Source: Macrostomum lignano (lineage: Eukaryota). From it: 64,000 bases of DNA. The stretch spans positions 1 through 64,000 of the forward strand of contig NIVC01000799.1 of NCBI GenBank assembly GCA_002269645.1, read 5' to 3'. Positions within the stretch are counted from its first letter, which is position 1; each line of letters starts with the position of its first letter. The translations under genes were made by a program, and so were the position numbers. Shown one piece after another: positions 3,001 through 53,241 of this stretch. The notes beneath the pieces were generated by a model. It made no database searches. It saw only the letters and a list, made by a program, of their open reading frames with translations, and had not been told where the DNA came from.

Positions 3001-3779
3001 TAGCAACTTTTAACAATCCAAGTATAGCAACACAGTTATGATGGTGTACGGACACCCGGCATCTGCTACGGATGGAGCATACTTCCTGCAAAAGTAAGTT
3101 TCTTTTCTTCTCCCTTCTTATCGGTTATCGTTATCGTATCAGTATACTTTTGAAGGTTTCTCTCACTTGGTGAGAACCGAGAAATGTTCCGCTATTTCCT
3201 TAAGTTCCTCGTTTCCTCCTTTTCCAAGTTCAGTTGTCCTTTTATTTTGCTGTCTGTGCTTTTTTTAGACATACTCTCCACCCCGTTGTAGGGAGGAGTG
3301 AGAGGGGGAAGAAATATAGAGGGCAAAAAAGGTCTTTGTTGGCCCTGATTCCCACACCCCCGTCCTTTACTTCTCTCAACCCCCGTCCCCTCAACCCCCA
3401 AATTTGGGGCCCCATCAGCCCTCCACTCACTGACACCGAGCCGTGTTTACGGTTATTGGACTGGGAAACTGGTGAGGTGGGGGTGGGGTAGACTAAACTT
3501 TGTTCGAACCACCCCAACAAAGACTCCAAGTAAAGTATATCCGTGTCCCAAAAGTCGGCCTCCCAGTGGCGCCTCCCAGGACCCCCAGTCTGTGCTAGAA
3601 GGTACATTGGAAGGCCTAGATAGATATAGTTCGAATTTCCTGCCCAGGCCTTCCAGCTCCACTTTTGCGCTCCCAGCGCCCTCCCCTTACCCAAGAAAAG
3701 TATCAATGACTTGTCCTCGGTCTGGGAGACCTGACTTAAATTAAATAGCGGGGGCGCTCTCATAGTCCAAAACTGAATC

Positions 3780-6243
3780 ATGTCGCCAGACAGCCCCCTG
3801 CCGGCCTCCGCCTGTCTAGCCAGCCAAATGCAGCAGCTCGGCACCACCATTTTCAGCTTTCTCTCCTCAGTGAAGCACCCGCCCGATGAGGCCTCGCCGC
3901 CACAGTTCTTCGTCAGCAATTTCAACGGCTTGGCCCATCCGGCTATCGAACCGTTGATGCCCGCCACTCCGATGCCCCCGGCTCCGGCCGCTTCAGCCGG
4001 CGCTCCTCCAGCAGTGACCGGTGGCGGAGGCAGCGGATTTCTGTACAACCTGCTCACCGCGCGCGACGCCTCCGCTGTACAGCAGCGCAGCGCCTTCCAC
4101 GCTGGCTGCGGCGGAGCCTCGCCGGCCCCGACGACTTCCAACGCTGCTGCTGCCGCCGCCGCCGCCTCCGCCGCACCAATGAACGCCGCTGCTGCCGACT
4201 TCCCGCGCCGATCCAACTCCATGGGCAATCCGACCACGCGCCGTGGCAGCGCCCACCTGCTGCCGCCGCCGCCTCCAGCCCTGCAGCCTCGGCAGCACCA
4301 GCCGCAGGGCCAGCAGCTAGCCGGTGGACGACCCTCCTCGGTGCCGCGCGGTTTTAACGCCGCCGCAGCCGCCGCAGCAGCGACCTCAGCCTACAGCGGC
4401 CTGTCGCCGTCGACCTCGTCGCCAAGCGCCTGCGGCTTCACCTCCTCCGAGGAGCCGCTAGACCTCAGCAGCAGCATGCGAGCAATGGCTGCGCAAGAGC
4501 ACCAGCTGGCCATGATGGGCGGGGACGCTGACAGCAGCATGGGCTCGCCGCCGGACCAGCAGCCGATGCTGCGCACCATCTTGAGCCAGGCGGCGCACCG
4601 CTACCAGACCCAGCTGCAGCCTGTCCAGCTGGCCAAGAAGAACGTCATGGTAGCGCAGTCGCACGTGTCCGACTGGCTGCGCAAAGGCTCCGAACTGGTG
4701 CACACCAATGCTGCACTGTTCGGCGCCCTGGACCGGCCTGCCCAGGCTGCTCTGCTGTGCCGAGCCTGGCCAAGCATCATCCAGTTGTACATGCTGGAGA
4801 ACAGCTTCCACTTTGCTGTCACTCCCTGCTCGCACGAACTGGCAGAGGAGCAGCTTAACCAGAATAGCGGCGGCGGCCGCTTGCCAACTAAGAAGTTCGC
4901 CGAAGATCTTCAGCGACTCATCTCGACCGCATCGGCAATTCCGTTTGACAATATGACCTACAATCTGTTGAGACTGGCCGCCATCTTCAAGCGTGAGTCA
5001 ACTGTTCGATAATTTGTCCTATACGGTGCATTGGAACCTTTAGTCAGGGAGTGCGGGTGATTCATTGCATTCGCTCGCTCACTCACGCGCTCGCCCTGTG
5101 CCCCTCTCTGCCTTGGCCCCCCTCCCCCTTAGCCTTAAATTGCGCCTTAGTCACCCTGTGTCTCCCTCCTGTTCCTCTTAAATTAATTTCATTTAAGTCC
5201 CTAGCGCCACTCATACCGATGGATCGCTAGTTTGAGAGAGTAGAAGTATGCGCGGGGGGGTTGCAGTAAGAAAAGAGTCTTGTTGTGTAATGCGAAATGT
5301 GTAATATGCCACATTTGCTACACATGCGCACGCCACACCACGCGCACGCTTGCGTGTTCTCTCCTCTTGTCCTCCAGGCTTTGCCTCACCCCTGCCCTGC
5401 TCCGCAACACTCGCTCGCTCACTCACTCAGCAACCCCCCCCCTCCCTCCGCCCCTCTGTGAGGAGAGGAGGTCACTCACGTGTCTCCAGCGCACAACCTC
5501 AAATCCTGTTTTCCCAGGCAGCATAGCCCATTATTGCACTTTACTTGTGCTATAAGCCAGTGTTGCCTATTCCTTTCCTGTTCAACCAACCCAGGGGTGG
5601 GGGTGGTCGTTTAAGCCCTCCTCCCGTCCTTCCCCCATGGCTTAGTCAGCGCATTGCGTATTGCCTGGGAGAGAGAGAGAGGGCTGACTCACCACTCAGC
5701 ACCCCCCCGGGGGAATTGGCCGGGTCTCGATTTGACCGCTGCGTGAACTTGCTTCGAACTTTATTTTAGCAGCGATTGGGGGAATACCCCCCCCCTCTTC
5801 CCCAACCTCTCTTACACACCCAGTTCGCGTGCCCGTTTTCCCAACATAATTGAGCAAAGGCTATTTTTGGAACTAGAAAAAATCCCCACAATCTTTAATT
5901 TCACATAGCGCTGCCGTACCCAGCCAGCTAATTGAGGGGGCAGAAAGAAGCCGAACTAGCAATGCAATCCGATGCTATGCAAAGTTGACATTTTCAAAAC
6001 TCGTCATTAAATTTTTCAGCCGAATCAGCGCACGAGATTCACCTGCACGAGGTTCAAGAGGAGATTATGAAACACGTGCTGCGCCACTTGGAGATGAAGG
6101 GCATGGCCAGGCACACCAAGGACGCCGTTGCTATGCTGCAGGCGGTCTCAGCAACAGACAAGGACATGCTGGAGAACCTGTTCTGCAGGCATCTGCTCAG
6201 CTTGTCTGTTGACGAGTTCATCAAGACCAAACTCGGCTGCTAG
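3780..6243 (+). CDS. NR0B (SHP/DAX1)-like orphan nuclear receptor, ligand-binding domain only; exons 3780-4992 and 6020-6243 (~478 aa)
   Basis: The ORF has a GFLYNLLT LxxLL box like DAX1/SHP ILY(S/A)LL. PVQL...FGALDRPAQAALLCRAWPSIIQLYMLENSFHFAV aligns by eye to the SHP LBD helices 3-5. Donor AAGC|GTGAGT (4992/4993) and acceptor TTTTTCAG|CC (6019/6020) join in phase 1, giving ...IFKPESAH...LENLFCRHLLSLSVDEFIKTKLGC* (helix 10-12-like). AATAAA at 6380-6385. No C4 zinc fingers in the ORF. Confidence 0.8.
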
Positions 6244-7726
6244 CACTGACTGGTAGCCCCTCCTGACCTTCATTTAGACACCAGCCAAGGTCTCCAAGCC
6301 GAGCAAAGACTTCATTTGGATAAAAAAAAGAAGTAAAAGTTGACTCAGGCGAATATTTTGTTAAAAAAAAATTGGTTATAATAAAGTGCAAATATTTGAA
6401 TTCCTCCTGATAAGATAATGGATTCCGTCAATCACAACTGATCCCGAGTGTTCGCTGTATTTTCCCTCATAATGTTGTGTGCTGTACTTTTTTTTACAAG
6501 AGCCCATCATAAAGCTTAAATTAAGCCCCCTGTCGCGTGCGTTTCATAGCCCGGTTACAAACGCCTCTATCCGTGTTTTTCTCATTCAAACTTATTAAAG
6601 CCGTTCGCGCTGTTGTTTTATTGCGTGGTTTTTTGTAACTTTCCGTGCTATAACTATAATTTGGTATTTTTATTGAATTAATTAATATTTCTGTAATCCG
6701 GTCTGGTTACTAACCTAGCTCAAGCACTACTCGGACTTTTCTGTGTTAAGAAAAGCAGGTTTTGAATTTTGAATTTTTAAAAGTACATAGTTTTGTGTTT
6801 ATAACAATAATAATGTTAATTAATTTCAATTGTCTGCATTTTTTGAGTTTATAGTGCGTGTGTGTCTCTTACTCTGTAAAATTTCCTAGCTGAATTTTTG
6901 CACCTCGTCAAGTATTGTTTTGTATTCAAGGCTAATGTCTACTCGGTACCTGCTTATACATTTCAATTTTTTTTATATACCGCTAATTCAGAGCGAGCTG
7001 TTCTCCTGCTTTTGCTAGGTCTTTTGGAGCAGAAAAATGTATTGTTTTGTTGGCAATTCACTCTTATCACACATTTGTGCACAGACATCCGACACTGTTG
7101 ATTTCTTTGTTGTTGTTGCTGTTGTTGTCTCGCTTTGTGTTTCCCGAGTTAAACAACAAAAAACACATCTTGCGTCAAAAAACAACCATTTGCTTAGTTT
7201 GCTTTGTTGTTTGTTTATTATTAGTTTTGTTTCCTCGTAGTTTGTTGTTGTCAAACGCTCTTGTGTACTTTTGAAATAGACGCGCGCTGTTGAAAATTCA
7301 GTCAGTATAAACTCATTAAATTGACGCTTCTTTGATATGTTTCTATTGATTCGTACGGTATAAGCAGGTCCGGCCATAGACAAAATCTAAGCAAACATTA
7401 CTGTCTATAAGACTAGCTTTTACCATAGACGACAACACGCGGCAGAATAAATAAGAGTGCATGCACTCTATGGAGGCAAATGAAACAGGCATGTACCATA
7501 GACTATCTCAACAGGGAATTCAATATTCATCTGGAAAAGTCCGTTTGGTAAATTCTGTATTGCGTCTTTTACTAGCTTTAACTGCCATGTGAAAGTCAGT
7601 AGAGAACAAATGCACAGTTGTGTGTGTGCATCTGGCCTTGTGACTGCCAACTGCATCCAGATGCGTCCTTCCTTTTGACAGGGGCGTTGCTTTTGAGCCC
7701 CATACATGTATGACAGACATGACCCC

Positions 7727-8110
7727 TCAGACCGACATGATTCCCAGACCGACATGATTTTCAGACCGACATTATTCCCAGACCGACATGATTCCCAGAC
7801 CGACATGATTCCCAGACCGACATGATTCCCAGACCGACATGATTCCCAGACCGACATGATTCCCAGACCGAATGATTCCCAGACCGACATGATTCCCAGA
7901 CCGACATGATTCCCAGACCGACATGATTCCCAGACCGAAATGATTCCCAGACCGACATGATTCCCAGACCGACATGATTCCCAGACCGACATGACAAACC
8001 GACACGACCCCCAGACCGACATAATCCCCAGACCGACACAGACATGATCCCCAGACCGACATGACCCCCAGACCGGTATAAACTCCCAGACCGACATGAT
8101 CCCCAGACCG
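7727..8110. repeat. 17-bp minisatellite (TTCCCAGACCGACATGA)n
   Basis: About 20 direct tandem copies visible. Confidence 0.95.
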
Positions 8111-9140: not shown

Positions 9141-10337
9141 TATTCTGCATAGATCTCTGTAGCTACCCACTGTACCTCCGAATCAGACTGCCTAGGAGTA
9201 TTAGGAGAAACGCGTACGAATTATTGGAATATTAAAGTGCTTGCGATAAAAATGATTTTAGAAGTGAAGAAGATCTTCTAATAGAGAGCAAACGATACTG
9301 CATGATACTTCAAAGAACTCTAAAAGAAGTAAATAAACTGCCAGCCCCACCGCCTTCTCTATCTTTGGCGCACGCCCAGTCCAAATACAATTTCTGACTA
9401 AACTTGTATATTACGTAATCGCCTTTTTTCAAACTCCAGCCAGCCCTGCAGCTAAGAGCGGACTTAAACGAAGGGTTATGTGGTAGGGCAACTGTCACTG
9501 TATCTGTGCGGGGCTGGTCTCGGACAGCAAGTTATTAGTTAGGGGCTTGGAATTTTCCAACCGGCCGCGGCCTGATCGATGCCAAAATTGCAGCCAGCTC
9601 TCTTGGGGCGTACAGAGAGAGAGAGAGAGAGAGTATCTGAGGGCTAAGGGTTCGCTTGATGAGGGCAAGAGCGGTTTGCCCTCCGCTGAGTCACCCTCAT
9701 TTGGACAGGGAGGGCAGAAATTGGGGTTACGTAACCTTTCTTTTACGGGTGCAATACTATTATGCAATCCAGGGGGCCCAAGCTACATAGTGCTTGCTGT
9801 TCTCTCAATCTCTCCCTATAGAACGGTTATATAGCAAGCCGGGGGCAGTACGAGGAAGAGAAGAAATGTAAAGCAAAAAGAAGTGAGCGAAAGAAGACAG
9901 CAGAGTTTCTGACAGCCAAGGCCGCGCGGCGTCCCGTGACAGCCCTCTCCTTCCTCTAGATGTTGCGTAATCGCTTCTTTTGGACTAAAAGCAGGGAGGG
10001 CGCGGCAAGGGCGGAGTTGGCTAGAACATTAGTCATCGCCGTGGCGGGTTGGGAAGCATTTTCAGCCGAACTAATCCGGCCTGCAGTCGGCTCATTAGAG
10101 TTTTTTAGAACTGGATGCCGATTGCGCAATAATCTACAGTCAGCATTTGACTGTGAGGGTATAAAGCGAATATTTGTACAATTATTGCATAACTATAATG
10201 GAGTTAGTGAATCGGATTTGTTCATTCAAATAGCTGAACCCACCTGCGATTCACTAGGGACAGGTGCATTCAATTTCATGCTACAGGCATCGCTCTACTG
10301 TTGCAGGCATCTTACTTATGTTAGGGCTGTCATACAG

Positions 10338-10860
10338 TCATATTAGTGTCGGGGCTGTCATACGAGTATTAGTGTCGGGGCTGTCATATTAGTGTCGGGG
10401 CTGTCATATTAGTGTTGGGGCTGTCATATTAGTGTCGGTGCTGTCATATTAGTGTCGGGGCTGTCATATTAGTGTCGGGGCTGTCATATTAGTGTCGGGG
10501 CTGTCATATTAGTGTCGGGGCTGTCATATTAGTGTCGGGGCTGTCATATTAGTGTCGGGGCTGTCATATTAGTGTCGGGGCTGTCATATTAGTGTCGGGG
10601 CTGTCATATTAGTGTCGGGGCTGTCATATTAGTGTCGGGGCTGTCATATTAGTGTCAGGGCTGTCATTCTAGTGTCTGTCAGACTAGTGTCAGGGGTGTC
10701 AAACTAGAGTCAGGGCTATCACACTAGTGTCAGACTAGTGTCAGGGGTGTCAAACTAGAGTCAGGGCTGTCACACTAGTGTCAGACTAGTGTCAGGGGTG
10801 TCAAACTAGAGTCAGGGCTGTCACACTAGTGTCAGACTAGTATCAGGGGTGTCAAACTAC
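10338..10860. repeat. 20-bp minisatellite (TATTAGTGTCGGGGCTGTCA)n followed by a related ~51-bp unit (about 3-4 copies)
   Basis: About 15 near-perfect 20-mers to ~10665, then a GTCAGACTAG...-based unit recurring at a 51-bp period. Confidence 0.93.
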
Positions 10861-11449: not shown

Positions 11450-11790
11450 CCCTTCCAGATCCCAAATCTCACTCCCAGGTCGCAAATCTAACTTCCATAT
11501 CCCATATTTCACTCCCAGATATCACATCTCCCTCTCAGATCCCGAATCTCCCTCCCAGATCCCAAATCTCACTCCCAGATCGCGAATCTCACCCCCAGAT
11601 GCGAATCTCACCCCCAGATCGCGAATCTCACCCTCAGATCGCGAATCTCACCCCCAGATCGCGAATCTCACTCCCAGATCGCGAATCTCACCCCCAGATC
11701 GCGAATCTCACCCCCAGATCGCGAATCTCACCCTCAGATCGCGAATCTCACCCCCAGATCGCGAATCTCACCCTCAGATCGCGAATCTCT
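11450..11790. repeat. 20-bp minisatellite (CAGATCGCGAATCTCACCCC)n, degenerate at its 5' side
   Basis: About 10 clean copies at 11575-11790, with decayed copies upstream. Confidence 0.93.
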
Positions 11791-12384: not shown

Positions 12385-13875
12385 TCCCTGCCATCACTCC
12401 AGCTCTCCCTGCCGTCACTCCAGCTCTCCCTGCCGTCACTCCAGCTCTCCCTGCCGTCACTCCAGCTCTCCCTGCCGTCACTCCAGCTCTCCCTGTCGTC
12501 ACTCCAGCTCTCCCTGTCATCCCCCAGCTCTCTCCCAGCCATCTCTCAGCCCCCAGATTTCTCCCAGCCACCCCCCAGCTCTCTCCCAGCCATCCCCCAG
12601 CTCTCTCCCTGCCATCCCCCAGCTCTCTCCCAGCCATCCCCCAGCTCTCTCCCTGCCATCCCCCAGCTCTCCCTGCCATCCCCCAGCTGTCTCCCTGCCA
12701 TCCTCCAGCTCTCTCCCAGCCATCCCCCAGCTCTCCCTGCCATCCCCCAGCTCTTCCTGCCATCCCCCAGCTCTCCCTGCCATCCCCCAGCTCTCTCCCA
12801 GCCATCCCCCAGCTCTCCCTGCCATCCTCCAGCTCTCCCTGCCATCCCCCAGCTCTCTCCCTGCCATCCTCCAGCTCTCCCTGCCATCCCCCAGCTCTCT
12901 CCCAGCCATCCCCCAGCTCTCCCAGCCATCCCCCAGCTCTCTCCCAGCCATCCCCCAGCTCTCTCCCTGCCATCCCCCAGCTCTCTCCCTGCCATCCCCC
13001 AGCTCTCCCTGCCATCCCCCAGCTCTCTCACAGCCACCCCCAGCTCTCCCTGCCATCCCCCAGCTCTCTCACAGCCATCCCCCAGCTCTCCCAGCCATCC
13101 CCCAGCTCTCTCCCAGCCATCCCCCAGCTCTCTCCCAGCCATCCGCCAGCTCTCTCCCTGCCATCCTCCAGCTCTCCCTGCCATCCCCCAGCTCTCTCCC
13201 TGCCATCCCCCAGCTCTCTCCCTGCCATCCCCCAGCTCTCCCTGCCATCCCCAGCTCTCTCACAGCCATCCCCCAGCTCTCCCTGCATCCCCCAGCTCTC
13301 TCACAGCCATCCCCCAGCTCTCCCAGCCATCCCCCAGCTCTCTCCCAGCCATCCCCCAGCTCTCTCCCAGCCATCCCCCAGCTCTCCCAGCCATCCGCCA
13401 GCTCTCTCCCAGCCATCCCCCAGCTCTCTCCCTGCCATCCCCCAGCTCTCCCTGCCATCCCCCAGCTCTCTCCCAGCCATCCCCCAGCTCTCCCTGCCAT
13501 CCTCCAGCTCTCCCTGCCATCCCCCAGCTCTCTCCCTGCCATCCTCCAGCTCTCCCTGCCATCCCCAGCTCTCTCCCAGCCATCCCCCCAGCTCTCTCCC
13601 AGCCATCCCCCAGCTCTCTCCCAGCCATCCCCCAGCTCTCTCCCTGCCATCCCCCAGCTCTCTCCCTGCCATCCCCAGCTCTCCCTGCCATCCCCCAGCT
13701 CTCTCACAGCCATCCCCCAGCTCTCCCAGCCATCCCCCAGCTCTCTCCCTGCCATCCCCCAGCTCTCTCCCAGCCATCCGCCAGCTCTCTCCCAGCCATC
13801 CCCCAGCTCTCTCCTAGCCATCCGCCAGCTCTCTCCCAGCCATCCCTCAGCTCTCTCCCAGCCATCCCCCCAGCT
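12385..13875. repeat. 21-24-bp C-rich minisatellite (CCATCCCCCAGCTCTC(TC)CC(T/A)G)n
   Basis: About 1.5 kb of tandem variants; explains the many overlapping repetitive ORFs here. Confidence 0.95.
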
Positions 13876-14339
13876 CCCTCTCCCGTCCCTGCCATTCCTG
13901 TGCCATCCACACTCCAAGACTGCCACTTTCCTGCCAAAAGTGTATGAAAATCGTTAACCAGACAAATTTCAGCTTACTTTTGGCATGACACTGCAAGTCG
14001 AAAAGGCAAACAATTTTCACGTTTTTCAAGACCCGTTCGTTTCAGAAAAGACCTACACGAGAGCGCCCAGACCTCCCAAGTAGCGCTGATTCTGGAACTG
14101 CAAAAACACTGTTATACTGTTGCACTGTTTCACTCAAGGCCTGATTTGTAAATTCTTTCTACAAGATAACAATCGAATGCAGTCGGGTCTTCATACATGT
14201 ATTTTAGTACAGCTCTGTGACGTGTGTAGTCCGAAATAGTGCTTCTGTCAACAGGCGCTGACAGTTCTAGTAGAGATGACCGAGCCGCCTAATGCTGCTT
14301 ATTGTGTATAAGACTGAAGCACTCTCTGAGTGAACTCTG

Positions 14340-15310
14340 ACTGAGAGTGACAGAATGGGAAGGCAAAGAGTGACAGAATGGGAAGGCAAAGAGTGACAGA
14401 ATGGGAAGGGAGAGAGTGACAGAATGGGAAGGCAAAGAGTGACAGAATGGGAAGGGAGAGAGTGACAGAATGGGAAGGGAGAGAGTGACAGAATGGGAAG
14501 GGAGAGAGTGACAGAATGGGAAGGGAGAGAGTGACAGAATGGGAAGGGAGAGAGTGACAGAGTGGAAAGTGGGTGAGTGAAAAAATTGGAAGTGAGAGAA
14601 AGTGACAGAATGGAAAGTCAGAGAGTGACAGAATGGGAAGGAAAAGAGTGACAGAATGGAAAGTCAGAGAGTGACAGAATGGGAAGGAAGAGAGTGACAG
14701 AAAGGGAAGGAAGAGAGTGACAGAATGGGAAGGGAGAGAGTGACAGATTGGGAAGGGAGAGAGGGACAGATTGGGAAGGGAGAGAGTGACAGATTGGGAA
14801 GGGAGAGAGGGACAGATTGGGAAGGGAGAGAGTGACAGATTGGGAAGGGAGAGAGTGACAGATTGGGAAGGGAGAGAGGGACAGATTGGGAAGGGAGAGA
14901 GTGACAGATTGGGAAGGGAGAGAGTGACAGATTGGGAAGGGAGAGAGTGACAGATTGGGAAGGGAGAGAGTGACAGATTGGGAAGGGAGAGAGTGACAGA
15001 TTGGGAAGGGAGAGAGTGACAGATTGGGAAAGGAGAGAGGGACAGATTGGGAAGGGAGAGAGTGACAGATTGGGAAGGGAGAGAGGGACAGATTGGGAAG
15101 GGAGAGAGGGACAGATTGGGAAGGGAGAGAGGGACAGATTGGGAAGTCAGAGAGTGACAGAATGGGAAGGGAGAGAGTGACAGAATCGGAAGGTAGAAAG
15201 TGACAGAATAGAAAGGCAGAGAGTGACAGAATAGGAAGGGAGAGAGTGACAAAGAGGAAAGTGGGAGAGTGACAAAATTGGAAGGGAGAGAAAGTGACAG
15301 AAAGGGAAGG
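14340..15310. repeat. 23-bp purine-rich minisatellite (GAGAGTGACAGATTGGGAAGGGA)n
   Basis: About 40 tandem copies. Confidence 0.95.
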
Positions 15311-15711
15311 CAAATGGTAGGGTTTGAGTACAGTTTGAGTACAAAAAAGCTAGGAAATGAGAAATAAAAGACTTCACGAAGGCAAAAACTTGTGTCGAGA
15401 CCATAAATCACGGAGAGTAGAGACAATTGCGGTCGGAACTGATAATTTGCCGGGGACATAAACGATTCTGTCAAAACAAACCCTCGTACTTTTCTGTTGG
15501 GGCTTACAAAGCTCGTTGGGAAGTCAGTTCTCGACTCGTTTCCCCCCTCCCTGTTAATCAAGGATCCAGCAAGCATTACAATGGCCAAATAAAAATAAAT
15601 ACACTGTGGTTAGCCGCGTGAGCAGAGGGAGGGGACTAAAGTGCAAAAAACAACAGTAACTCATTTCTCTCCGTAGGTGTGCGCTCTGTCTTACTGTAAA
15701 CAGAGAGTGGA

Positions 15712-16345
15712 GAAGAGAGAGTAGAGAGTGGGGAAGAGAGATAAGACAGTGGAGAAGAGAGATTATAGAGTGGGGAGAGAGATGAGAGAGTGGGGAAGAG
15801 ATATGAGAGAGTGGGGAAAAGAGATAAGACAGTGGGGAAGAGAGATGAGAGAGTGGGGAAGAAGAGAGATGAGAGAGTGGGGAAGAGAGATGATAGAGTG
15901 GGGAAGAGAGATGAGAGAGTGGGGAAGAGAGATGAGAGAGTGGGGAAGAGAGATGAGAGAGTGGGGAAGAGAGATGAGAGAGTGGGGAAGAGAGATGAGA
16001 GAGTGGGGAAGAGAGATGAGAGAGTGGGGAAAAGAGATAAGACAGTGGGGAAGAGAGATGAGAGAGTGGGGAAGAAGAGAGATGAGAGTGAGGGAAGAGA
16101 GATGATAGAGTGGGGAAGAGAGATGAGAGAGTGGGGAAGAGAGATGAGAGTGGGGAAGAGAGATGAGAGAGTGGGGAAGAAGAGAGATGAGAGTGGGGAA
16201 GAGAGATGATAGAGTGGGGAAGAGAGATGAGAGAGTGGGGAAGAGAGATGAGAGTGGGGAAGAGAGATGAGAGAGTGGGGAAAAGAGATAAGAGAGTGGG
16301 GAAGAGAGATGATAGAGTGTCGAAGAGAAATGAGAGAGTGGGGAA
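15712..16345. repeat. ~21-bp purine-rich minisatellite (GAGAGTGGGGAAGAGAGATGA)n
   Basis: About 28 tandem copies. Confidence 0.95.
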
Positions 16346-17579: not shown

Positions 17580-18119
17580 TACTAAATAAATCCTGCAATC
17601 TCCATTTTCGCAAGTCAAACTACCTAGCTCAGAGTTCAGTAAAGCTGCTACTATCTCCTCGGTGTACTTATACTCTAGTATGGGATGGGTGCGCACTTCT
17701 GCGCCCTTCATTGCGCCAAGAACGAGAGTAATTTTTTAGCAAATCCAGACTTGACTGCGCAACTAGCAAAAATCAGTCAGTTAGTCAGTCAGTCAGGCCA
17801 AGTGCGAATGAACCGACTGAATTGCGCGCCGCCAAGTCTGGAGGGCAAGACGGAGTGCGCATTAAAACAAATCGTAATTCTCTTAGTTCTGTTAAGCTCT
17901 GTCAAAGCTTGAACGTCGAGAATTGCGTCTATTAGGGCTTTTTCACCAGCGTTGCACTTGTTCAGCAGATGCTTTCGGTGCAACTCAGTGCCCTGGGCGA
18001 GCAGACGCGATTTTTAAGTAATTATCAACTACAGTTTCAACTGCCAACCTATATAGCACTCTTTAAAGCACTTGCCTGCCTAGAAATCAGCCTAACACTG
18101 CAGATGTCACTCTATAAGC

Positions 18120-19875
18120 TTTGTCCCTCCAACAGCTACTTTGTCACTCCAGGAGCTACTTTGTCACTCCATGAGCTACTTTGTCACTCCAACCGCTACT
18201 TTGTCACTCAATTAGCTACTTTGTCACTCCAACCGCTACTTTGTCACTCCAGGAGCTACTTTTTCCCTCAAGGAGCTACTTTGTCACTCCAACCGCTACT
18301 TAGTCACTCAATTAGCTACTTTGTCACTCCAACCGCTACTCTGTCACTCCAGGAGCTACTTTGTCACTCCAGGAGCTACTTTGTCACTCAAGGAGCTACT
18401 TTGTCACTCCAACCGCTACTCTGTCACTCCAGGAGCTACTTTGTCACTCCATGAGCTACTTTGTCACTCCATGAGCTACTTTGTCACTCCAACAGCTACT
18501 TTGTCACTTCAACAGCTACTTTGTCACTCCAACAGCTACTTTGTCACTCTATTAGCTACTTTATCACTCCATGAGCTACTTTGTCACTCCAACAGCTACT
18601 TTGTCACTCCAGGAGCTACTTTGTCACTCTATAAGCTACTTTATCACTCCATGAGCTACTTTGTCACTCTATTAGCTACTTAGTCACTCCAGGAGCTACT
18701 TTGTCACTCCAACCGCTACTTAGTCACTCAATTAGCTACTTTGTCACTCCAACCGCTACTCTGTCACTCCAGGAGCTACTTTGTCACTCCAGGAGCTACT
18801 TTGTCACTCAAGGAGCTACTTTGTCACTCCAACAGCTACTTTGTCACTCCAACAGCTACTTTGTCACTCCAACCGCTACTTTGTCACTCCAGCCGCTAAT
18901 TTGTCACTCCAGGAGCTACTTTGTCACTCCAACAGCTACTTTGTCACTCCAACAGCTACTTTGTCACTCCAACCGCTACTTTGTCACTCCATGAGCTACT
19001 TTGTCACTCCAGCCGCTACTTTGTCACTCCAACAGCTACTTTGTCACTCCAGCCGCTACTTTGTCACTCCAACAGCTACTTTGTCACTCCAACAGCTACT
19101 TTGTCACTCCAGGAGCTACTTTGTCACTCCAACAGCTACTTTGTCACTCAATTAGCTACTTTGTCACTCCAACAGCTACTTTGTCACTCCATGAGCTACT
19201 TTGTCACTTCAACAGCTACTTTGTCACTCCAGGAGCTACTTTGTCACTCCAACAGCTACTTTGTCACCTCAACAGCTATTTAGTCCCTCCAGAAGCTACT
19301 TTGTCACTCCAAAAGCTACTTTGTCACCTCAACAGCTACTTAGTCACTCCAGGAGCTACTTTGTCACTCCATGAGCTACTTTGTCACTCCAGGAGCTACT
19401 TTGTCACTCCAAAAGCTACTTTGTCACCTCAACAGCTATTTAGTCCCTCCAGGAGCTACTTTGTCACTCCAAAAGCTACTTTGTCACCTCAACAGCTACT
19501 TAGTCACTCCAGGAGCTACTTTGTCACTCCATGAGCTACTTTGTCACTCCAGGAGCTACTTTGTCACTCCAAAAGCTACTTTGTCACCTCAACAGCTACT
19601 TAGTCACTCCAGGAGCTACTTTGTCACTCCATGAGCTACTTTGTCACTCCAGGAGCTACTTTGTCACTCCAAAAGCTACTTTGTCACTCAATTAGCTACT
19701 TTGTCACTCAATTAGCTACTTTGTCACTCTAGGAGCTACTTTGTCACCTCAACAGCTACTTTGTCACTCTAGGAGCTACTTTGTTACTCTAGGTGCTACT
19801 TTGTCACTCTAGGAGCTACTTTGTCACTCTAGGAGCTACTTTGTCACCTCAACAGCTCCTTTGTCACTCCAGGAG
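18120..19875. repeat. 20-bp minisatellite (GCTACTTTGTCACTCCANNA)n
   Basis: About 87 tandem copies with variant triplets (GGA/ACA/TGA/ACC). Confidence 0.97.
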
Positions 19876-20484
19876 CCTTATTGCCGCCTCAGGTGCCATT
19901 TGGAGCTCCACAACCAGCCTGAATGAACAGGATTCGGTAGAGTAAACATACGTGCTTATACAAATCCGTGCTATTCAAGTGCTATAGAAAATTATTTATG
20001 GGAATATCGCCCCGAAAATAGCGTCAATATTTAAACAGAGCCATCTCAGAATGATGCACAAGGAACTGCATTGTTAACTAGAAGTATAGAATTCAATCAA
20101 ACACACCGCTGTCTTTTAACCACATTGCGGCAAACCGGTTCTAAATAGAGACTACGGTAGTGTATTTATATGTCACCAGTGGCCGAAATTGAACACCTAC
20201 AGTGTGTACGGTTCAATGTTTGTTATGATTTGAAGACACCAACCTGAAGGAAGCTGGCGACTGGAAATACAATACAATAAATTAATTGTCTTCTCTGAAC
20301 CATTAAATTTGACTGTAATTTAGAATGTTCGGATAGCGAAATCTGAAAGACACGGATAATTTATTCTTATGATAATTTTTTCATTTCGTTTTGAGTTCAG
20401 AAAAAAGTAATGCTTTGAGGGGCATTGTATATTATTGGATCAATTGTGAATGCAATTTTAGGCATTTTTGTGTCAGTTTTGTGT

Positions 20485-21650: not shown

Positions 21651-22784
21651 CTTATCATCTATCATTCATGCATGTGCAAGTGTTGAACGCAGAATTTATG
21701 TTTATGAAACCGAACAACTGTTTAGTGATAACTCAGACGTACTGAACTCAGACAGTACATGTCGACTCGTATTTACCATCGAGCTCGTATTGACCGCCCC
21801 AGCCAACTACTACAGACGGCAAGAGATTTAGGAAGCTGTATAGGAAATTTAATGCCCGGTAAAAGTACACCCAGTGCACGACAGCGCCAACGCCTGGAAC
21901 CTTCGTCTGCAAAGGTATGAAGATACTAAAAAAAGTAACCGGCAGGCTAGAAAAGTTTAGTTAGAACTTTATTAACTTTGAATTAACTTTTAACTTTGTA
22001 ACTGTGATTATCTTTGAAAACATTTTTGAAATTATGATTCAGTACAGAGATTTTGTGTGTGTATGTATTGCAGTGAGTGGCACTATTGTGTCACGCAAGA
22101 ATTAGCAAAAAATAAATGCATTATTCCTAAGTACAAAGTGCATTTTCCAAAACAGCTTTTATCTTTACTGGGTCTCTTGTTCCTAAGCAGCGTAACACGC
22201 GATGGCCTCGTGAACTGTCTGAATGTCTGACTTTTCAGTGCAATGTGCATAGAAATAGTAACAGGGGCCATGGCAAAGAGCATTATCTTGCTTCTGTCTG
22301 CTCCACCATCTACAACATGCTGCTGACCAAAATCATATTGAATGCATACTGTGAAGAAAGCATCGAATAATGCTCTTTGACTAACAGTTAGTTACCAAAT
22401 TTTGCAAAAAAATCATTCAGGATAGATCGTTTGCGATACAAAGAGGCCGAGCACTGCGAGCAGACCGAACTGACTTAACGAGGCACGTCGTGGACTTTTT
22501 GCGCACCTGAAGCTAAAGAAGAGTGGAAGGATGCTTCTCCGCTCTGTTCTTGCTTGACCTCTAATGCGCTGGACATGAAATGAATCAAAGTGGCGCGCGT
22601 GCAGTCGCTAGAGATGTCCTCTAGGGCTGAATTTTACAGAATAGCTAATTGCTATTTTGTACTGTTCAGTAGTATGACTAGATAATTGATGCCCATTGAG
22701 CAGGAGCAGAGCGGCATACGAGTCGTAAGAAGGAGCAGGAGTACATGTATAAGAGCAGGAGCGGGAGCAGGAGCAGAACCACTT

Positions 22785-25700
22785 ACGCTCCACCCACCAG
22801 TTGCCAACGCCCTGATGACGCCTGGCAGCCAACCTTCAACAACCTACCGGTCACCGGCAGAGCCATCCTCGGGGGCGACTTCAACGCCCATGGCAGCTGG
22901 GAACATCACCTCGACGAGGATGCCAGGTGCCAAACGGTTGATGAATGGGTTGCTCGCAACGGCCTGACCATCTGCAACTCAACCAACAGGTGCCCCACAG
23001 GTGCCCCTGTACAGTGCCCCAGTACAGGTCGCATCAGCAGTTCGGATGTGACGATCTGCAGCAGCGCCCTCTCCGGCGCCCCGATTGACTCCTGGAGAAC
23101 TGGCCCCGACTGGGGCAGCGAACACCTGCCAATCTTCTGCAACATCCCAGCCTCCAACGCCGGACCGCCAATCCGCCAGGGACAGAAACGCTGGATCTGC
23201 AAGAAAGCAAACTGGGCTGTTTTGACTGCCTGGGCCGACTCCGAACTACAAGCGGTCGCGCTCAACGATGAGGCAACTCGGCTTTCCGATGCAATACTCT
23301 CAGCTGCGCGACACAGCATCCCGCGCAGCTCAGGGAAGCCAACACGCCGGCTCCCATTCTGGAACGACGCGTGCGAGGATGCCACGAAAGCGACCAAAGC
23401 AGCACGTCAGGCCGCCGAAGCCGACCCGACCCCGGAGAACCTTGCCGCAGCCGCACGGGCCCGACATAATGCCCCAGACTGCCTCAACAAGGAAAAGAAA
23501 GCCTTTCTGCTGGAAAGGGCGGCACATTTCCACCAGGGCTCCGACATCTTTGGCCCTTTCGCGCCATGAGAGGCGAAGGGTACAAGACAGGGGACTCCGC
23601 AGCGATTACCAGACCCGCCTCAGAAAACGTCCCCGAGCGCACGGCCCGCACTAACAAAGAAAAGGCAGAGCTTTTCTGCCAGATGTACGCGGAAGTGAGC
23701 CGAGTCCCAAGACGCCGTCAGGATACTGCAATCCGCTACGAAGCCAACGAGGCCACGGCAGTCACAGATGACCCCCCTGCCTTCTTCTCTATTGGCGAGC
23801 TCCGCGCCGCTGTTCGTTGCTTCAAGTCGGAGAAGTCTGTGGGGGCCGACGGCGTCTCAAACGAAATGCTGAAACGCCTCCCCGCGGCCGCTGAAAACAT
23901 CCTTCTCAAACTAATCAACCGCACCTGGACACAAAAGGCAAACACCGACCAGCTGGCGAAATGGCACCATCATCCCGATCCGGAAAAAGGACAAGAGTGC
24001 CACGTCACCGGACAGCTATCGTCCTGTCGCCTTGACCAGCTGCGTCGCTAAGTGCGCAGAGCGCATGGCGCTTGTCCGCCTTAACCACGACCTGGAAAGC
24101 CGCGGCTGCCTATCACAAAATCAAGCCGGTTTCCGCCGTGGACGCAGCACTGAGGACCAGCTCGCCAGGGTCTGTCAAGCTATTTTCGACGGCTTGGAAA
24201 ACCACCCTGCCCTGCGCAGCATCCTGTGCCTTATCGACTTCAGCCGGGCCTACGACAAAGTCTGGCGCCTGGCGCTCTACGCCAAAATGCGACGCATGGG
24301 CATCTCCAGACGTATGACGCGCTGGGTCCGCGGCCTCCTAGCGCCCACCCTGTGGAACATATACGTCAATGACCTCGCCGAGGCTGTTGCCGCAGCCAGC
24401 CCACGAACCGACCTGAGCATTTACGCGGACGACTCGGCCCTACTAGCCACGACCCGCTCCCTGGCTACCTGCGCAGAGGAGCTCCAACCTGCTCTGGACG
24501 CAGTGACCAGCTGGTGCAGGACCTGGAAGGTCACCATTAGCAATAGCAAATGCTGCTATACCACTTTCACTATGGCCCCAAACGAGAATAACGGAAAGAG
24601 CCAGGTGAACCTTTGCATAAATGGAGATAAGCTCAACTTCGAGCTCACGCCGACCTTTTTGGGGCTCACGTTGGACGGCAGTCTCAGTTTCGCTCAGCAC
24701 GCGCAAACATCCGACGGAAGATGGCCGCCCGTAAGCGCCGCGCCCACTTGCTGCCCTCGCTACCAGAGCAGCCCTCGCGGACAGCAAGATCCTCCGGACA
24801 GCGTACATCGCAACAGTCCGCTCAGTGGCCGACTACGCCTGCGGCGTCTGGGGATCCTTTGCAGCCCCTCCTCCTAACCAACTCCTAATCGACCGACAAC
24901 AACACAGCTGCGCTCGTATTTTCCCCGGGTGCCTGCAGCTGACTCATATCCGGGATCTGCTGGCTGTTGCCAACCTCCCCACCTTTGGCCACCTGATCCT
25001 CCAGCGCAGTGCAAGTCTCCGTGAAGGAATCCTGCGCCTCCCAGCCGAGACCCCGGCGCGTGAGGTCGCCCTGAGAGACACTCAGCCGCGCCTCAAGAAC
25101 CGTGCCTTTGAGAGCCACCAGAGACAGCAGCGTGACCTCACAGAAATCTGCACCGTCGCGCTCGACTACCAGCGGCACTTCCGAGGCTGCTGGCGACGTG
25201 TCAGCCGGGAACTCGACCGCCCTGGAACCCATAAAGCCTCCCGAAAGAGGACCAGCTGCAACACCAGCCGCCGTGGGAGGCCCGCGGCACCGTCGACTGC
25301 GACCTCTCGCTATCCGAGCAATGCAGCCGCAGACTCCCCCCCGGTCTCCGCAACCACGCGGCCATCACGTACCTGGAGAAGGGCGGCATGCACCCCGTCC
25401 AAGCCTGGACTGATGGATCAGCCTCCGGCGGCACCTCCAATGGCACCAGTGCGGCCGTCGTGATCACCAGTGCAGAAGGCGGCATCTGCAGCAGCACACA
25501 AGCGGAACTTCATGCCATCCTCATCGCCTTACAGTCCATCTCCGGAGAACTCGCCAACCCCCCGGACATCAACATCCTCACCGACTCGCAGGCAGCCATT
25601 CAGAGTATTATGAGAGGTCCCAACGGCGGAGGCAGGACCGTCTCTGACATCTGGCGCATAATTAGCAACGCGAGTGCCGACGTTCGCCTCACCTGGATCC

Positions 25701-26147
25701 CCAGCCCACTGTGGGATGCAGCTCAACGAACGCGCAGACAAGGCAGCAAAGAACACTGTCACTTGCCAAGTTGATCAGGAGGTACCGCTCACGGCTGCAA
25801 ACGCCTACCTCCACCGTCTGAGATCCAACCTCGACCTCGAGTTCTGTGGCCGGGAAACTTCCTGGCCACAACTGCCAGCTTTACCCAGAAGGGCCGAGGT
25901 GGCCATTAATCAGCTTCGCGCCGGCTGCAGCCTCCAAGTGGCCGCCACTCGCCATCGGCTCGGCCTGTCTGACAACCCGCTGTGCCCGGACTGCGGGGAC
26001 CTGGACACTGAGCAGCATCTTCTTTTCGACTGCCCCAGAGGACACGCGGCACACCCGGCTGATCGTGAGCTTCTCCTCTGTGATGCGCCAGCAGTTCTCA
26101 AGCTCGTTCGCAGACTGGGGCGCCAACTGACTTCGAAGCAGCGCTGA
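22785..26147 (+). mobile_element. Degenerate non-LTR retrotransposon (I-group, possibly Ingi-like): APE endonuclease - RT - RNase H - CCHC finger
   Basis: EN motifs GDFNAH and GSEHLPI. RT motifs QAGFRRGRSTEDQL, LIDFSRAYDKVW, YADDSAL, PTFLGLTLD. RNase H motifs WTDGSA, AELHAILIAL, ILTDSQAAI, W(I)PS-HCGMQLNERADKAAK. C-terminal CPDCGDLDTEQHLLFDC. Split over several frames; 5' truncated. Confidence 0.92.

Positions 26148-50029: not shown

Positions 50030-53241
<3,212 letters not shown>

What the first reader, a model, noticed from the sequence alone, without database searches (positions are those of the whole stretch)
3780..6243. DBD-less NR0B (SHP/DAX1)-like receptor in an invertebrate, carrying a PLDLS CtBP-type motif
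Seen: no zinc fingers; one DAX1/SHP-style LxxLL box (GFLYNLLT, codons 4041-4055); a perfect PLDLS (4455-4469) in the low-complexity N-terminus; an SHP-like LBD; one phase-1 intron after LAAIFK. Established: NR0B1/2 are two-exon DBD-less corepressors that bind other receptors through LxxLL boxes, and PxDLS is the CtBP-docking motif. Inference: this could be an NR-to-CtBP adaptor repressor. I do not know of NR0B genes being characterised in flatworms.
Basis: partly seen in the sequence, partly recalled or inferred. Interest (0 to 1): 0.7.

Follow-up and report, generated by a model that had tools for sequence, protein, structure and literature searches.

The report
Flatworm DAX1/SHP-type receptor with CtBP motif
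This is a real, selectively maintained gene of the flatworm Macrostomum lignano for a nuclear receptor with no DNA-binding domain, a divergent member of the invertebrate DAX1/SHP (NR0B) family, and its PLDLS motif is conserved across that family, which suggests a testable link to the corepressor CtBP.

Summary
A related flatworm transcript shows a 56-nt coding exon at 3038-3093 spliced to 3857, so 3780-3856 is intron. The coding sequence is 3038-3093, 3857-4992 and 6020-6243, giving 471 aa.

There is no zinc-finger DNA-binding domain. An in-frame stop lies 9 codons upstream of the start, the 64-kb window encodes no such domain, and none of 98 relatives has one.

The C-terminus is a nuclear-receptor ligand-binding domain (AlphaFold2 pLDDT 92.5), and mouse DAX-1 is the best structural match. 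The protein sits with 100% bootstrap inside a DBD-less family found in molluscs, annelids, nemerteans, brachiopods and rotifers. Published work calls that family Nr0b1/2 (oyster 2014, Platynereis 2026). My own tree joins it to DAX1/SHP only weakly (57%), but an N-terminal box, the intron phase and position, and the fold all agree.

P-x-D-L-S/T occurs in 60 of 75 family members, against 1.4 expected by chance, and in 0 of 120 tetrapod NR0B proteins. I found no paper that notes this motif or describes a flatworm NR0B. CtBP binding remains an inference.

Verdict: a new member of a known kind that carries a good, testable hypothesis.

The parts
3011..3013 (+). In-frame TAA stop, 9 codons upstream of the start codon. 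It lies downstream of the nearest strong acceptor-like site (TTATTTTTAG, about 3000).
   Evidence: This prevents an upstream exon from being read in frame into the ORF.
3038..3093 (+). Coding exon 1 (ATGATG...CAAAA|GTAAGT). It encodes MMVYGHPASATDGAYFLQ plus two bases of the Asn19 codon.
   Evidence: 20 of the first 25 residues are identical to ortholog P0002. The L001 transcript aligns to 3035-3093 and then continues at 3857.
3094..3856 (+). Intron 1 (GT...AG, phase 2).
   Evidence: An alternative promoter inside this intron is not excluded.
3083..3863 (+). NR box 1, FLQNFL (residues 16-21). It is split by intron 1 and coded by 3083-3093 plus 3857-3863.
   Evidence: It corresponds to the family's N-terminal 'C.C...P.IL(Q/H)xLL' box, which matches the vertebrate NR0B N-terminus by hhalign (probability 85.6%, P=5.5e-6). 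The Macrostomum copy lacks the cysteines.
3857..4992 (+). Coding exon 2. It covers the low-complexity N-terminal region (A, P, S and G make up 54%) and the first two-thirds of the LBD.
4035..4058 (+). NR box 2, GFLYNLLT (residues 79-86), a DAX1/SHP-type ΦLYxLL box.
   Evidence: It is identical in P0002 and P0005. Tetrapod NR0B1/2 carry (S/A/T)ILY.(I/L)L.
4200..4253 (+). Basic-serine motif FPRRSNSMG...RRGSA (residues 134-151).
   Evidence: It is conserved in P0002, P0004 and P0005, and appears as R.RS.S.GS in many family members. The idea that it is a phosphorylation or 14-3-3 site is inference only.
4455..4469 (+). PLDLS (residues 219-223), a CtBP-type PxDLS motif in the context SSEEPLDLSS.
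   Evidence: It is conserved in P0002 and P0003 and in 60 of 75 family members, against 1.4 expected. It is absent from 120 tetrapod NR0B proteins.
4566..4583 (+). Box 3, MLRTIL (residues 256-261), 21 residues before the LBD core.
   Evidence: All but one of 24 members examined have S(L/I)L(R/K)x(L/I)L at a variable distance of 21-72 aa. It is predicted helical with pLDDT about 84-88. It could be LBD helix 1 rather than a free NR box; this is undecided.
4620..6240 (+). Nuclear-receptor ligand-binding domain, residues 274-471 (PVQLAKK...KLGC), interrupted by intron 2.
   Evidence: AF2 pLDDT is 92.5 and pTM 0.88. The top Foldseek hit is 3f5c_B DAX-1. The family profile hits NR LBDs in PDB at E=1e-27. 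dN/dS is 0.12.
4993..6019 (+). Intron 2 (GTGAGT...TTTTCAG), phase 1, in the Pro398 codon after LAAIFK.
   Evidence: It has the same phase as, and lies within one codon of, the single coding-sequence intron of a bird NR0B1 (TVLFNP|D) and of the Haliotis family member (LVLFNA|G).
6020..6243 (+). Coding exon 3 (74 codons plus TAG). It covers helices 8/9 to 12 of the LBD.
6380..6385 (+). AATAAA, 137 nt after the stop codon. Candidate polyadenylation signal.
   Evidence: This is a consensus match only.

Best explanation
The locus (3038-6243, + strand) is an expressed-type, selectively constrained gene of Macrostomum lignano. It encodes a 471-aa nuclear receptor without a DNA-binding domain. It is the divergent flatworm member of the spiralian Nr0b1/2 family, the invertebrate counterpart of vertebrate DAX1 and SHP.

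Proposed mechanism: the protein cannot bind DNA itself. Its N-terminal ΦxxΦΦ/LYxLL boxes (FLQNFL, FLYNLL, possibly MLRTIL) dock onto the AF-2 coregulator groove of DNA-bound receptors, as DAX1 and SHP do. Its conserved PLDLS then recruits the corepressor CtBP, and the LBD provides a further repression or dimerisation surface.

Shown here:
- the gene structure;
- the absence of a DBD;
- the NR-LBD fold, closest to DAX-1;
- family membership;
- conservation of the boxes and of PxDLS;
- purifying selection.

Inferred:
- binding to other receptors;
- binding to CtBP;
- transcriptional repression.
For: **Gene model**
- Ortholog transcripts L001 and L002 align to 3035-3093 | 3857-3892 and to 4445-4991 | 6019-6241, with canonical GT..AG at each break.

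**No DBD**
- An in-frame stop lies upstream in the genome and in both transcripts.
- The window has no DBD-like coding sequence.
- 0 of 98 relatives has a C4 pattern.

**Fold**
- AF2 pLDDT is 92.5 for the LBD and 83.0 for the longer construct.
- DAX-1 3f5c_B ranks first in both Foldseek searches, with rmsd 3.5 Å. NR2F6, TLX/PNR, SHP and TR4 follow.

**Family**
- An exhaustive HMMER search found 98 relatives.
- Named ones come from Owenia, Capitella, Lineus, Tubulanus, Elysia, Haliotis, Lottia, Babylonia, Octopus, Lingula and Rotaria.
- Family monophyly including the window protein has 100% bootstrap.

**Link to NR0B**
- The family is sister to DAX1+SHP in the NJ tree (57% bootstrap). Alternatives get 0-6%.
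- N-terminal box profile against the vertebrate NR0B N-terminus: hhalign probability 85.6%.
- The intron has the same phase and position as in bird NR0B1.
- Published orthology and knock-out work exist for CgNR0B and Platynereis Nr0b1/2.

**PxDLS**
- 60 of 75 members carry it, against 1.4 expected. The consensus is (Q/E)(D/E)EP(M/I)DLSCK.

**Selection**
- dN/dS is 0.17 overall and 0.12 in the LBD.
Against: - The window LBD alone finds nothing in PDB by sequence at E<=10, and Pfam has no precomputed hit on the M. lignano proteins. The domain is very divergent.
- The family profile scores COUP-TF2 (100.4 bits) and DAX1 (98.1) alike, and SHP lower at 78.8.
- Support for family+NR0B is only 57%, in a simple distance tree with few NR2 references.
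- NCBI's automatic names for family members are inconsistent: COUP-TF2-like, NR2C1-A, PNR-like.
- In Macrostomum the residues aligned with the AF-2 charge clamp have changed: H3 Lys to Thr and H12 Glu to Thr or Ala. The LBD may therefore behave differently from DAX1.
- No expression data for this exact locus were available.
- CtBP binding is untested, and vertebrate NR0B proteins lack the motif.
Confidence: 0.7

Rival explanations
1. The spiralian DBD-less family, including this gene, arose by an independent loss of the DBD from an NR2-type receptor (NR2F, NR2E or NR2C). Under this reading it only resembles DAX1/SHP and is not their ortholog.
For: - Profile scores for COUP-TF2 and DAX1 are equal.
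- Bootstrap for family+NR0B is only 57%.
- Mouse DAX1 itself scores TR4 at 79.9 bits, about as well as family member P0020 scores against mouse DAX1 (70.4 bits).
- Automated names for family members point to NR2 groups.
Against: - The N-terminal Cys-box plus ILxxLL profile matches the vertebrate NR0B N-terminus (hhalign 85.6%).
- The FLYNLL/ILYNLL box is shared.
- DAX-1 is the top structural match twice.
- Intron phase and position are shared, although this intron may also exist in NR2 genes, which I did not test.
- Groupings with NR2F, NR2E or TR4 get 0-6% bootstrap.
- The published phylogeny supports orthology.
Confidence: 0.17
2. The conserved PxDLS is functional but is not a CtBP dock. It might bind another partner, or act as a degron or localisation signal, with repression working through the LBD as in DAX1 and SHP.
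For: - Vertebrate NR0B proteins repress without this motif (0 of 120).
- The rotifer subgroup lacks it.
- No binding data exist.
Against: - The family consensus EP(M/I)DLSCK(K/R) fits the PxDLS class exactly.
- The motif sits in a low-complexity, presumably disordered stretch with acidic residues before it and basic residues after it.
- From my own knowledge of the field, CtBP is the established reader of this motif.
Confidence: 0.3
3. This is an ordinary nuclear receptor whose DBD exon lies further upstream, beyond the 3 kb of flank available in the window.
For: - Only 3,037 bases lie upstream of the start within the window.
Against: - An in-frame TAA at 3011-3013 lies between the nearest strong acceptor-like site and the ATG.
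- Two independent ortholog transcripts carry a 5' UTR with an in-frame stop 54 codons upstream and no finger.
- All 98 relatives lack fingers, including models from chromosome-scale assemblies.
Confidence: 0.03
4. This is a decaying pseudogene or a recent non-functional duplicate in the repeat-rich, partly duplicated M. lignano genome.
For: - The genome holds near-copies: P0003 is a partial model 78% identical to the window protein (86% in the alignment), with a divergent middle segment, and P0004 is a 56%-identical paralog.
- The window is full of minisatellites and a retrotransposon.
Against: - The 471-codon frame is intact across three exons with canonical splice sites.
- dN/dS is 0.17, and 0.12 in the LBD.
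- The motifs are conserved with the ortholog.
Confidence: 0.02

Closest known systems
Spiralian Nr0b1/2: Crassostrea gigas CgNR0B (PMC4070562), Platynereis dumerilii Nr0b1/2 (PMC13012086; bioRxiv 10.1101/2025.03.12.642703) and Tridacna crocea DAX1 (cited in those papers)
   Same: - No DBD.
- N-terminal LxxLL-type boxes.
- PxDLS.
- The S(L/I)LRxLL box.
- A C-terminal NR LBD with the phase-1 intron at LFNx|G.
- The window protein falls inside this family with 100% bootstrap.
   Different: - It is much more divergent: only 25-33% LBD identity to other phyla, no Pfam hit and no direct PDB hit.
- Box 1 has lost its cysteines.
- There is an extra intron inside box 1.
- The residues aligned with the AF-2 charge clamp are substituted.
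- I found no flatworm member in the papers, and the platyhelminth NR census (PMC8363021) lists no NR0A/B entry in the part of its count table that the look-up returned, which covers the free-living flatworms including M. lignano.
Vertebrate DAX1 (NR0B1) and SHP (NR0B2)
   Same: - DBD-less.
- A ΦLYxLL box near the N-terminus.
- An LBD that is the best structural match.
- The same intron phase and position in the LBD.
- Presumed action as a corepressor that docks on other receptors.
   Different: - Tetrapod NR0B proteins have no PxDLS (0 of 120).
- Most tetrapod NR0B sequences scanned show a single N-terminal box; two mouse Dax1 isoforms show a second, and mammalian DAX1 has 65-70-aa repeats (own knowledge).
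- LBD sequence identity to the window protein is too low for direct detection.
- DAX1/SHP genes have two coding exons; this gene has three.
RIP140/NRIP1 (a functional analogue, not a relative; from my own knowledge of the literature)
   Same: A corepressor that binds nuclear receptors through LxxLL boxes and recruits CtBP through PxDLS-type motifs. This is the same two-motif logic proposed here.
   Different: It is unrelated in sequence, has no NR LBD, is much larger and is recruited to ligand-bound receptors. It was not compared computationally here.
Drosophila Knirps (NR0A; from my own knowledge)
   Same: An atypical nuclear-receptor-family repressor that uses a PxDLS-type motif to recruit CtBP.
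   Different: Knirps keeps the DBD and lacks the LBD, the opposite truncation, and it binds DNA directly. It was not compared computationally here.
Orphan NR2 receptors: COUP-TF (NR2F), TLX/PNR (NR2E) and TR2/4 (NR2C)
   Same: The closest LBDs by profile score and by fold after DAX-1.
   Different: They possess a C4 zinc-finger DBD and lack the N-terminal boxes and PxDLS. The family does not group with them (0-6% bootstrap).

Membership tests
NR0B (DAX1/SHP-type atypical nuclear receptors) | C-terminal nuclear-receptor ligand-binding-domain fold | tested here: met
   AF2 pLDDT 92.5 and pTM 0.88. The top Foldseek hit is DAX-1 3f5c_B, with TMt 0.75 and rmsd 3.5. The family profile hits NR LBDs at E=1e-27.
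NR0B (DAX1/SHP-type atypical nuclear receptors) | No C4 zinc-finger DNA-binding domain | tested here: met
   An upstream in-frame stop is present in the genome and in two ortholog transcripts. The 64-kb window has no DBD-like sequence. 0 of 98 relatives has the pattern.
NR0B (DAX1/SHP-type atypical nuclear receptors) | N-terminal LxxLL-type (ΦLYxLL) receptor-interaction box | tested here: met
   FLYNLL at residues 80-85 compares with (S/A/T)ILY.(I/L)L in 118 of the 120 tetrapod NR0B sequences scanned. The family box-1 profile matches the vertebrate N-terminus by hhalign (85.6%, P=5.5e-6). Binding itself was not tested.
NR0B (DAX1/SHP-type atypical nuclear receptors) | LBD groups with DAX1/SHP in a phylogeny | tested here: inconclusive
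   The NJ tree recovers family+NR0B with 57% bootstrap; the alternatives get 0-6%. The tree has few NR2 references and uses a distance method only. The published trees support orthology for the annelid and mollusc members.
NR0B (DAX1/SHP-type atypical nuclear receptors) | Phase-1 intron in the LBD at ...LFNP|D... | tested here: met
   Bird NR0B1 has TVLFNP|D, Haliotis has LVLFNA|G and the window has AAIFK|P, all phase 1. The window site is one codon off in the alignment. Whether NR2 genes share this intron was not tested. This gene also has an extra 5' intron.
NR0B (DAX1/SHP-type atypical nuclear receptors) | Represses other nuclear receptors by direct binding | not testable with these tools
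   Needs interaction and reporter assays.
Spiralian Nr0b1/2 family | Reciprocal similarity and monophyly with the mollusc, annelid, nemertean and brachiopod DBD-less receptors | tested here: met
   The best non-flatworm hits have E=5e-18 to 1e-12. Monophyly has 100% bootstrap.
Spiralian Nr0b1/2 family | Shared linear architecture: box 1, box 2, PxDLS, S(L/I)LRxLL box, LBD | tested here: met
   All five elements occur in the same order in the window protein and in the family.
CtBP-recruiting repressors (PxDLS class) | P-x-D-L-S core in an exposed region, conserved in orthologs | tested here: met
   PLDLS lies at residues 219-223 in an A/P/S/G-rich region. It is conserved in P0002 and P0003 and in 60 of 75 relatives, against 1.4 expected. 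Disorder is inferred from composition and was not modelled.
CtBP-recruiting repressors (PxDLS class) | Physical binding to CtBP and CtBP-dependent repression | not testable with these tools
   No assay was possible.
NR2E/NR2F/NR2C orphan receptors (the rival filing) | C4 zinc-finger DBD N-terminal to the LBD | tested here: not met
NR2E/NR2F/NR2C orphan receptors (the rival filing) | LBD nested within one of these groups | tested here: not met
   Bootstrap is 0% for family+NR2F, 6% for family+NR2E and 0% for family+TR4. Raw profile scores to COUP-TF2 are nonetheless as high as to DAX1.

The most novel reading that the evidence does not exclude
The ancestral spiralian NR0B, and possibly the ancestral bilaterian one, was a receptor-to-CtBP adaptor. 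LxxLL-type boxes tether it to DNA-bound nuclear receptors, and a strictly conserved EP(M/I/L)DLS(C)K motif brings in CtBP. Tetrapod DAX1 and SHP lost this motif and switched to other corepressors, rotifers lost it independently, and flatworms, previously thought to have no NR0B, retain the whole module.
Probability: 0.5. Interest if true: 0.6.

Novelty: new member of a known kind. Interest (0 to 1): 0.5.

Why it matters
DAX1 and SHP are central repressors of steroidogenic and metabolic nuclear receptors in vertebrates. They were long regarded as vertebrate inventions, and invertebrate orthologs have only recently been studied functionally.

This locus adds two things:
1. It extends the family to flatworms. 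DBD-based receptor censuses cannot detect such a gene. M. lignano is a laboratory model with RNAi and transgenesis, in which gonad, stem-cell and regeneration roles could be tested.
2. The comparison brings out a motif that the papers I could search do not mention. A CtBP-type PxDLS is conserved across at least five phyla of spiralian NR0B proteins and is absent from tetrapod ones.

If the motif binds CtBP, it gives a simple molecular mechanism for NR0B repression in invertebrates. It would also be a clear case of corepressor switching during evolution, and it is testable with a one-motif mutant.

Tried and rejected
1. phmmer of the full protein and of the LBD alone against PDB sequences found no NR hit at E<=10. 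The link to known receptors had to go through the family profile.
2. The first database search with the full-length protein was swamped by low-complexity candidates and gave only 3 hits. An LBD-only exhaustive HMMER search solved this.
3. Profile and single-sequence scores against PDB could not decide between NR0B and NR2F: COUP-TF2 scored 100.4 and DAX1 98.1 bits with the profile, and 72.4 and 70.4 with a single sequence.
4. An internal alternative promoter is not excluded.
5. I tested whether box 3 (MLRTIL) is a free NR box or LBD helix 1. It is predicted helical with fair confidence, but Foldseek alignments that include H1-bearing receptors have rmsd 13-17 Å, so the question stays open.
I reran it without that row.
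7. Supplementary data of the Platynereis paper, needed to see its taxon list, are not held.
8. Literature searches for NR0B with CtBP or PxDLS, and for NR0B with flatworms, found nothing relevant.
9. The organisms behind several unnamed relatives could not be determined. These include P0005, the closest non-Macrostomum hit, and the 'PVDLSCKR' subgroup.
Full report
**1. What is in the sequence**

It starts at ATG 3780 and runs to a GT donor immediately after LAAIFK (4992|4993). An acceptor TTTTCAG at 6019|6020 restores the frame, making the intron phase 1, and the frame ends at TAG 6241-6243.

LYNLL is at 4041-4055 and PLDLS at 4455-4469, as stated. The spliced product is 100% identical to UniRef A0A1I8J8M1 of Macrostomum lignano, annotated only as 'NR LBD domain-containing protein'. 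The organism guess (a flatworm) was correct.

**2. Corrected gene model**

The closest relative outside this genome is P0002 (473 aa, 57% identity). It is encoded by two intron-less contigs from sequencing-run assemblies (L001 and L002), which are evidently transcripts.

P0002 begins MMVYGHPTHAAADGAFFLQNFLTSVKQPPDEA. The window encodes MMVYGHPASATDGAYFLQ at 3038-3093, followed by GTAAGT. Splicing to the acceptor at 3856|3857 gives ...FLQ-N-FLSSVKHPPDEA in frame.

blastn of the transcript against the window gives blocks at 3035-3093 and 3857-3892. These are contiguous in the transcript (278|279). Further blocks lie at 4445-4991 and 6019-6241.

The conserved coding sequence is therefore 3038-3093, 3857-4992 and 6020-6243, for 471 aa. 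An internal alternative promoter cannot be excluded.

An AATAAA lies 137 nt after the stop.

**3. No DNA-binding domain**

- In the genome an in-frame TAA (3011-3013) lies 9 codons before the ATG and downstream of the nearest strong acceptor-like site.
- Both ortholog transcripts have an in-frame stop 54 codons upstream of the start and no finger.
- A tblastn with an NR DBD probe finds nothing in the 64 kb (best E=1.3). No CxxC-x13-CxxC pattern exists in any frame.
- None of the 98 relatives has a C4 pattern.

There is an upstream spliced exon, but it encodes no finger.

**4. The domain and the family**

The window LBD is too divergent to hit any solved structure by sequence. Pfam has no precomputed hit on the M. 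lignano proteins, whereas relatives carry PF00104.

An exhaustive HMMER search of 1.84 billion representatives with residues 249-471 found 98 proteins at E<=1e-3. Those with names come from:
- annelids (Owenia, Capitella);
- nemerteans (Lineus, Tubulanus);
- molluscs (Elysia, Haliotis, Lottia, Babylonia, Octopus);
- a brachiopod (Lingula);
- a rotifer (Rotaria).

These are listed. The databases name them inconsistently: COUP-TF2-like, NR2C1-A, PNR-like, NR2F1-B-like.

A profile of 20 family LBDs hits NR LBDs in PDB strongly but does not discriminate among them. COUP-TF2 scores 100.4 bits, DAX1 98.1, NR2F6 92.8, PNR 91.2 and SHP 78.8.

With that alignment AlphaFold2 gives a confident model of the window LBD (pLDDT 92.5, pTM 0.88). 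A longer construct gives pLDDT 83. For both models the best Foldseek match in PDB is mouse DAX-1 (3f5c_B, rmsd 3.5 Å), followed by NR2F6, TLX/PNR, SHP and TR4.

**5. Is it NR0B?**

I built an LBD alignment from three sources:
- the family;
- tetrapod DAX1 and SHP sequences fetched from the database;
- COUP-TF2, NR2F6, PNR, RXR, USP and TR4 sequences read from the PDB alignments.

In a neighbour-joining tree (194 columns, 300 bootstraps):
- the family including the window protein is monophyletic (100%);
- the window protein groups with P0002 and P0005 (98%);
- the family is sister to DAX1+SHP in the best tree, but with only 57% support;
- grouping with NR2F, NR2E or TR4 gets 0%, 6% and 0%.

Independent characters point the same way:
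- The spiralian N-terminal 'C.C...P.ILxxLL' box matches the N-terminus of non-mammalian DAX1 and of SHP by profile-profile comparison (probability 85.6%, P=5.5e-6).
- The window's FLYNLL has the same core as the (S/A/T)ILY.(I/L)L box found in 118 of the 120 tetrapod NR0B sequences scanned.
- The LBD intron is phase 1 in a bird NR0B1 (TVLFNP|D), in the Haliotis member (LVLFNA|G) and in the window (AAIFK|P). The window site is one codon off in the alignment.

The literature already files this family as NR0B:
- CgNR0B in the oyster (PMC4070562).
- Platynereis Nr0b1/2, with a phylogeny, knock-outs and LXXLL-related motifs. The authors describe it as the single ortholog of dax-1 and shp, lost from arthropods and nematodes (bioRxiv 10.1101/2025.03.12.642703 and PMC13012086).

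I found no mention of a flatworm member there. The platyhelminth NR census (PMC8363021) shows no NR0A/B count for the free-living flatworms, including M. lignano, in the part of its count table that the look-up returned.

**6. The motifs**

The N-terminal 270 residues are A/P/S/G-rich. They carry conserved islands in a fixed order:
- box 1, FLQNFL (residues 16-21, split by intron 1);
- box 2, GFLYNLLT (79-86);
- a basic-serine motif, FPRRSNSMG...RRGSA (134-151);
- PLDLS (219-223);
- box 3, MLRTIL (256-261).

Identity to P0002 is concentrated in these islands and in the LBD.

Across the family, P.DL[ST] is present in 60 of 75 proteins that have at least 150 N-terminal residues, against 1.4 expected after shuffling. 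Its context is remarkably constant: (Q/E)(D/E)EP(M/I)DLSCK(K/R). The exceptions are mainly the N/Q-rich rotifer subgroup.

None of 120 tetrapod NR0B1/2 proteins has even the relaxed pattern P.[DN]L[STCV]. The papers I could search do not mention CtBP or PxDLS in connection with NR0B.

Box 3 is nearly universal in the family. It sits 21-72 residues before the LBD core. It is predicted helical with pLDDT about 84-88. Whether it is LBD helix 1 or a free NR box could not be decided.

**7. Selection**

Nei-Gojobori dN/dS against the ortholog transcript is 0.17 overall, 0.24 for the N-terminal half and 0.12 for the LBD. The gene is under purifying selection and is not a pseudogene.

**8. Mechanism**

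Established knowledge of DAX1 and SHP is that they dock through LxxLL-type boxes on the AF-2 surface of other receptors and repress them. Established knowledge of PxDLS is that it is the CtBP-docking motif.

The most likely reading is that this protein is a non-DNA-binding corepressor that bridges DNA-bound nuclear receptors to CtBP. The anatomy and its conservation are shown here. The two binding steps and the repression are inferred.

One peculiarity stands out. In Macrostomum the residues aligned with the AF-2 charge clamp are changed: H3 Lys to Thr, and H12 Glu to Thr in the window protein and to Ala in P0002. Its own coregulator groove may therefore not work in the canonical way.

**9. 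Verdict**

The gene is a new, very divergent flatworm member of a known family, so it is not a new kind of system. The added value lies in three things:
- the corrected gene model;
- the extension of NR0B to Platyhelminthes;
- the phylum-spanning, apparently unreported PxDLS motif, which makes a CtBP-based repression mechanism directly testable.

Noticed in passing
relatives P0017, P0021, P0031, P0038, P0045, P0062, P0064-P0070, P0073, P0078, P0081, P0082, P0084, P0090, P0091, P0094: A distinct N/Q-rich subgroup of the family. One member is named Rotaria magnacalcarata, so they are probably rotifers. They lack PxDLS but share an 'ELGEVV.I(D/E)K(L/I)KN' motif upstream of the LBD. In the NJ tree they cluster with the flatworm sequences (91%), which may be long-branch attraction.
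   Followed up: partly
window 4200-4253 (protein residues 134-151): A conserved basic-serine motif, FPRRSNSMG...RRGSA. It is shared with P0002, P0004 and P0005, and appears as R.RS.S.GS in many spiralian members. It looks like a kinase or 14-3-3 site that could regulate the protein.
   Followed up: no
P0003 and P0004 (M. lignano proteins): The M. lignano assembly holds at least two more related models. One is a partial near-copy (BOX15_Mlig025668g2) whose middle part diverges as if frameshifted. The other is a 56%-identical paralog (A0A1I8F4F9). This fits the known duplication of this genome.
   Followed up: no
window LBD, helix 3 (about 4671-4700) and helix 12 (6208-6240): The residues aligned with the nuclear-receptor AF-2 charge clamp are replaced in both Macrostomum-type sequences: H3 Lys to Thr, and H12 Glu to Thr or Ala. 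They are kept in other family members and in DAX1/SHP.
   Followed up: partly
window 22745-26147 (+): A run of ORFs with endonuclease-like and reverse-transcriptase-like text (FRRGRSTEDQLARV, YADDSALL). This is a non-LTR retrotransposon broken into several frames.
   Followed up: no
window 56271-57149 (-): A 292-aa ORF with a basic helix-loop-helix region of atonal/NeuroD type ([28 protein letters not shown]...[17 protein letters not shown]).
   Followed up: no
window 38278-38796 (+) and 41976-42422 (+): An R-SNARE/longin-like ORF with a C-terminal membrane anchor, and a protein-kinase C-lobe exon that resembles the NAK/AAK1 family.
   Followed up: no
window 50882-53241 (+): Multi-pass membrane transporter-like ORFs interrupted by a 207-copy (GTCT)n array at 51600-52427.
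   Followed up: no
window 7712-8110, 10337-10859, 11455-11789, 12385-13880, 14343-15310, 15702-16345, 18119-19876, 37381-38302, 43936-44513, 47381-48422, 50261-50812, 53249-53829, 54643-55775, 58090-58635 and others: More than 25 minisatellite arrays (periods 12-50 nt, up to 88 copies) fill the intergenic space and create long spurious ORFs on both strands.
   Followed up: no
database names of relatives: Public automatic annotation names members of this DBD-less family as 'COUP transcription factor 2-like', 'NR2C1-A', 'photoreceptor-specific nuclear receptor-like' and 'NR2F1-B-like'. These names are misleading for proteins without a DBD.
   Followed up: partly
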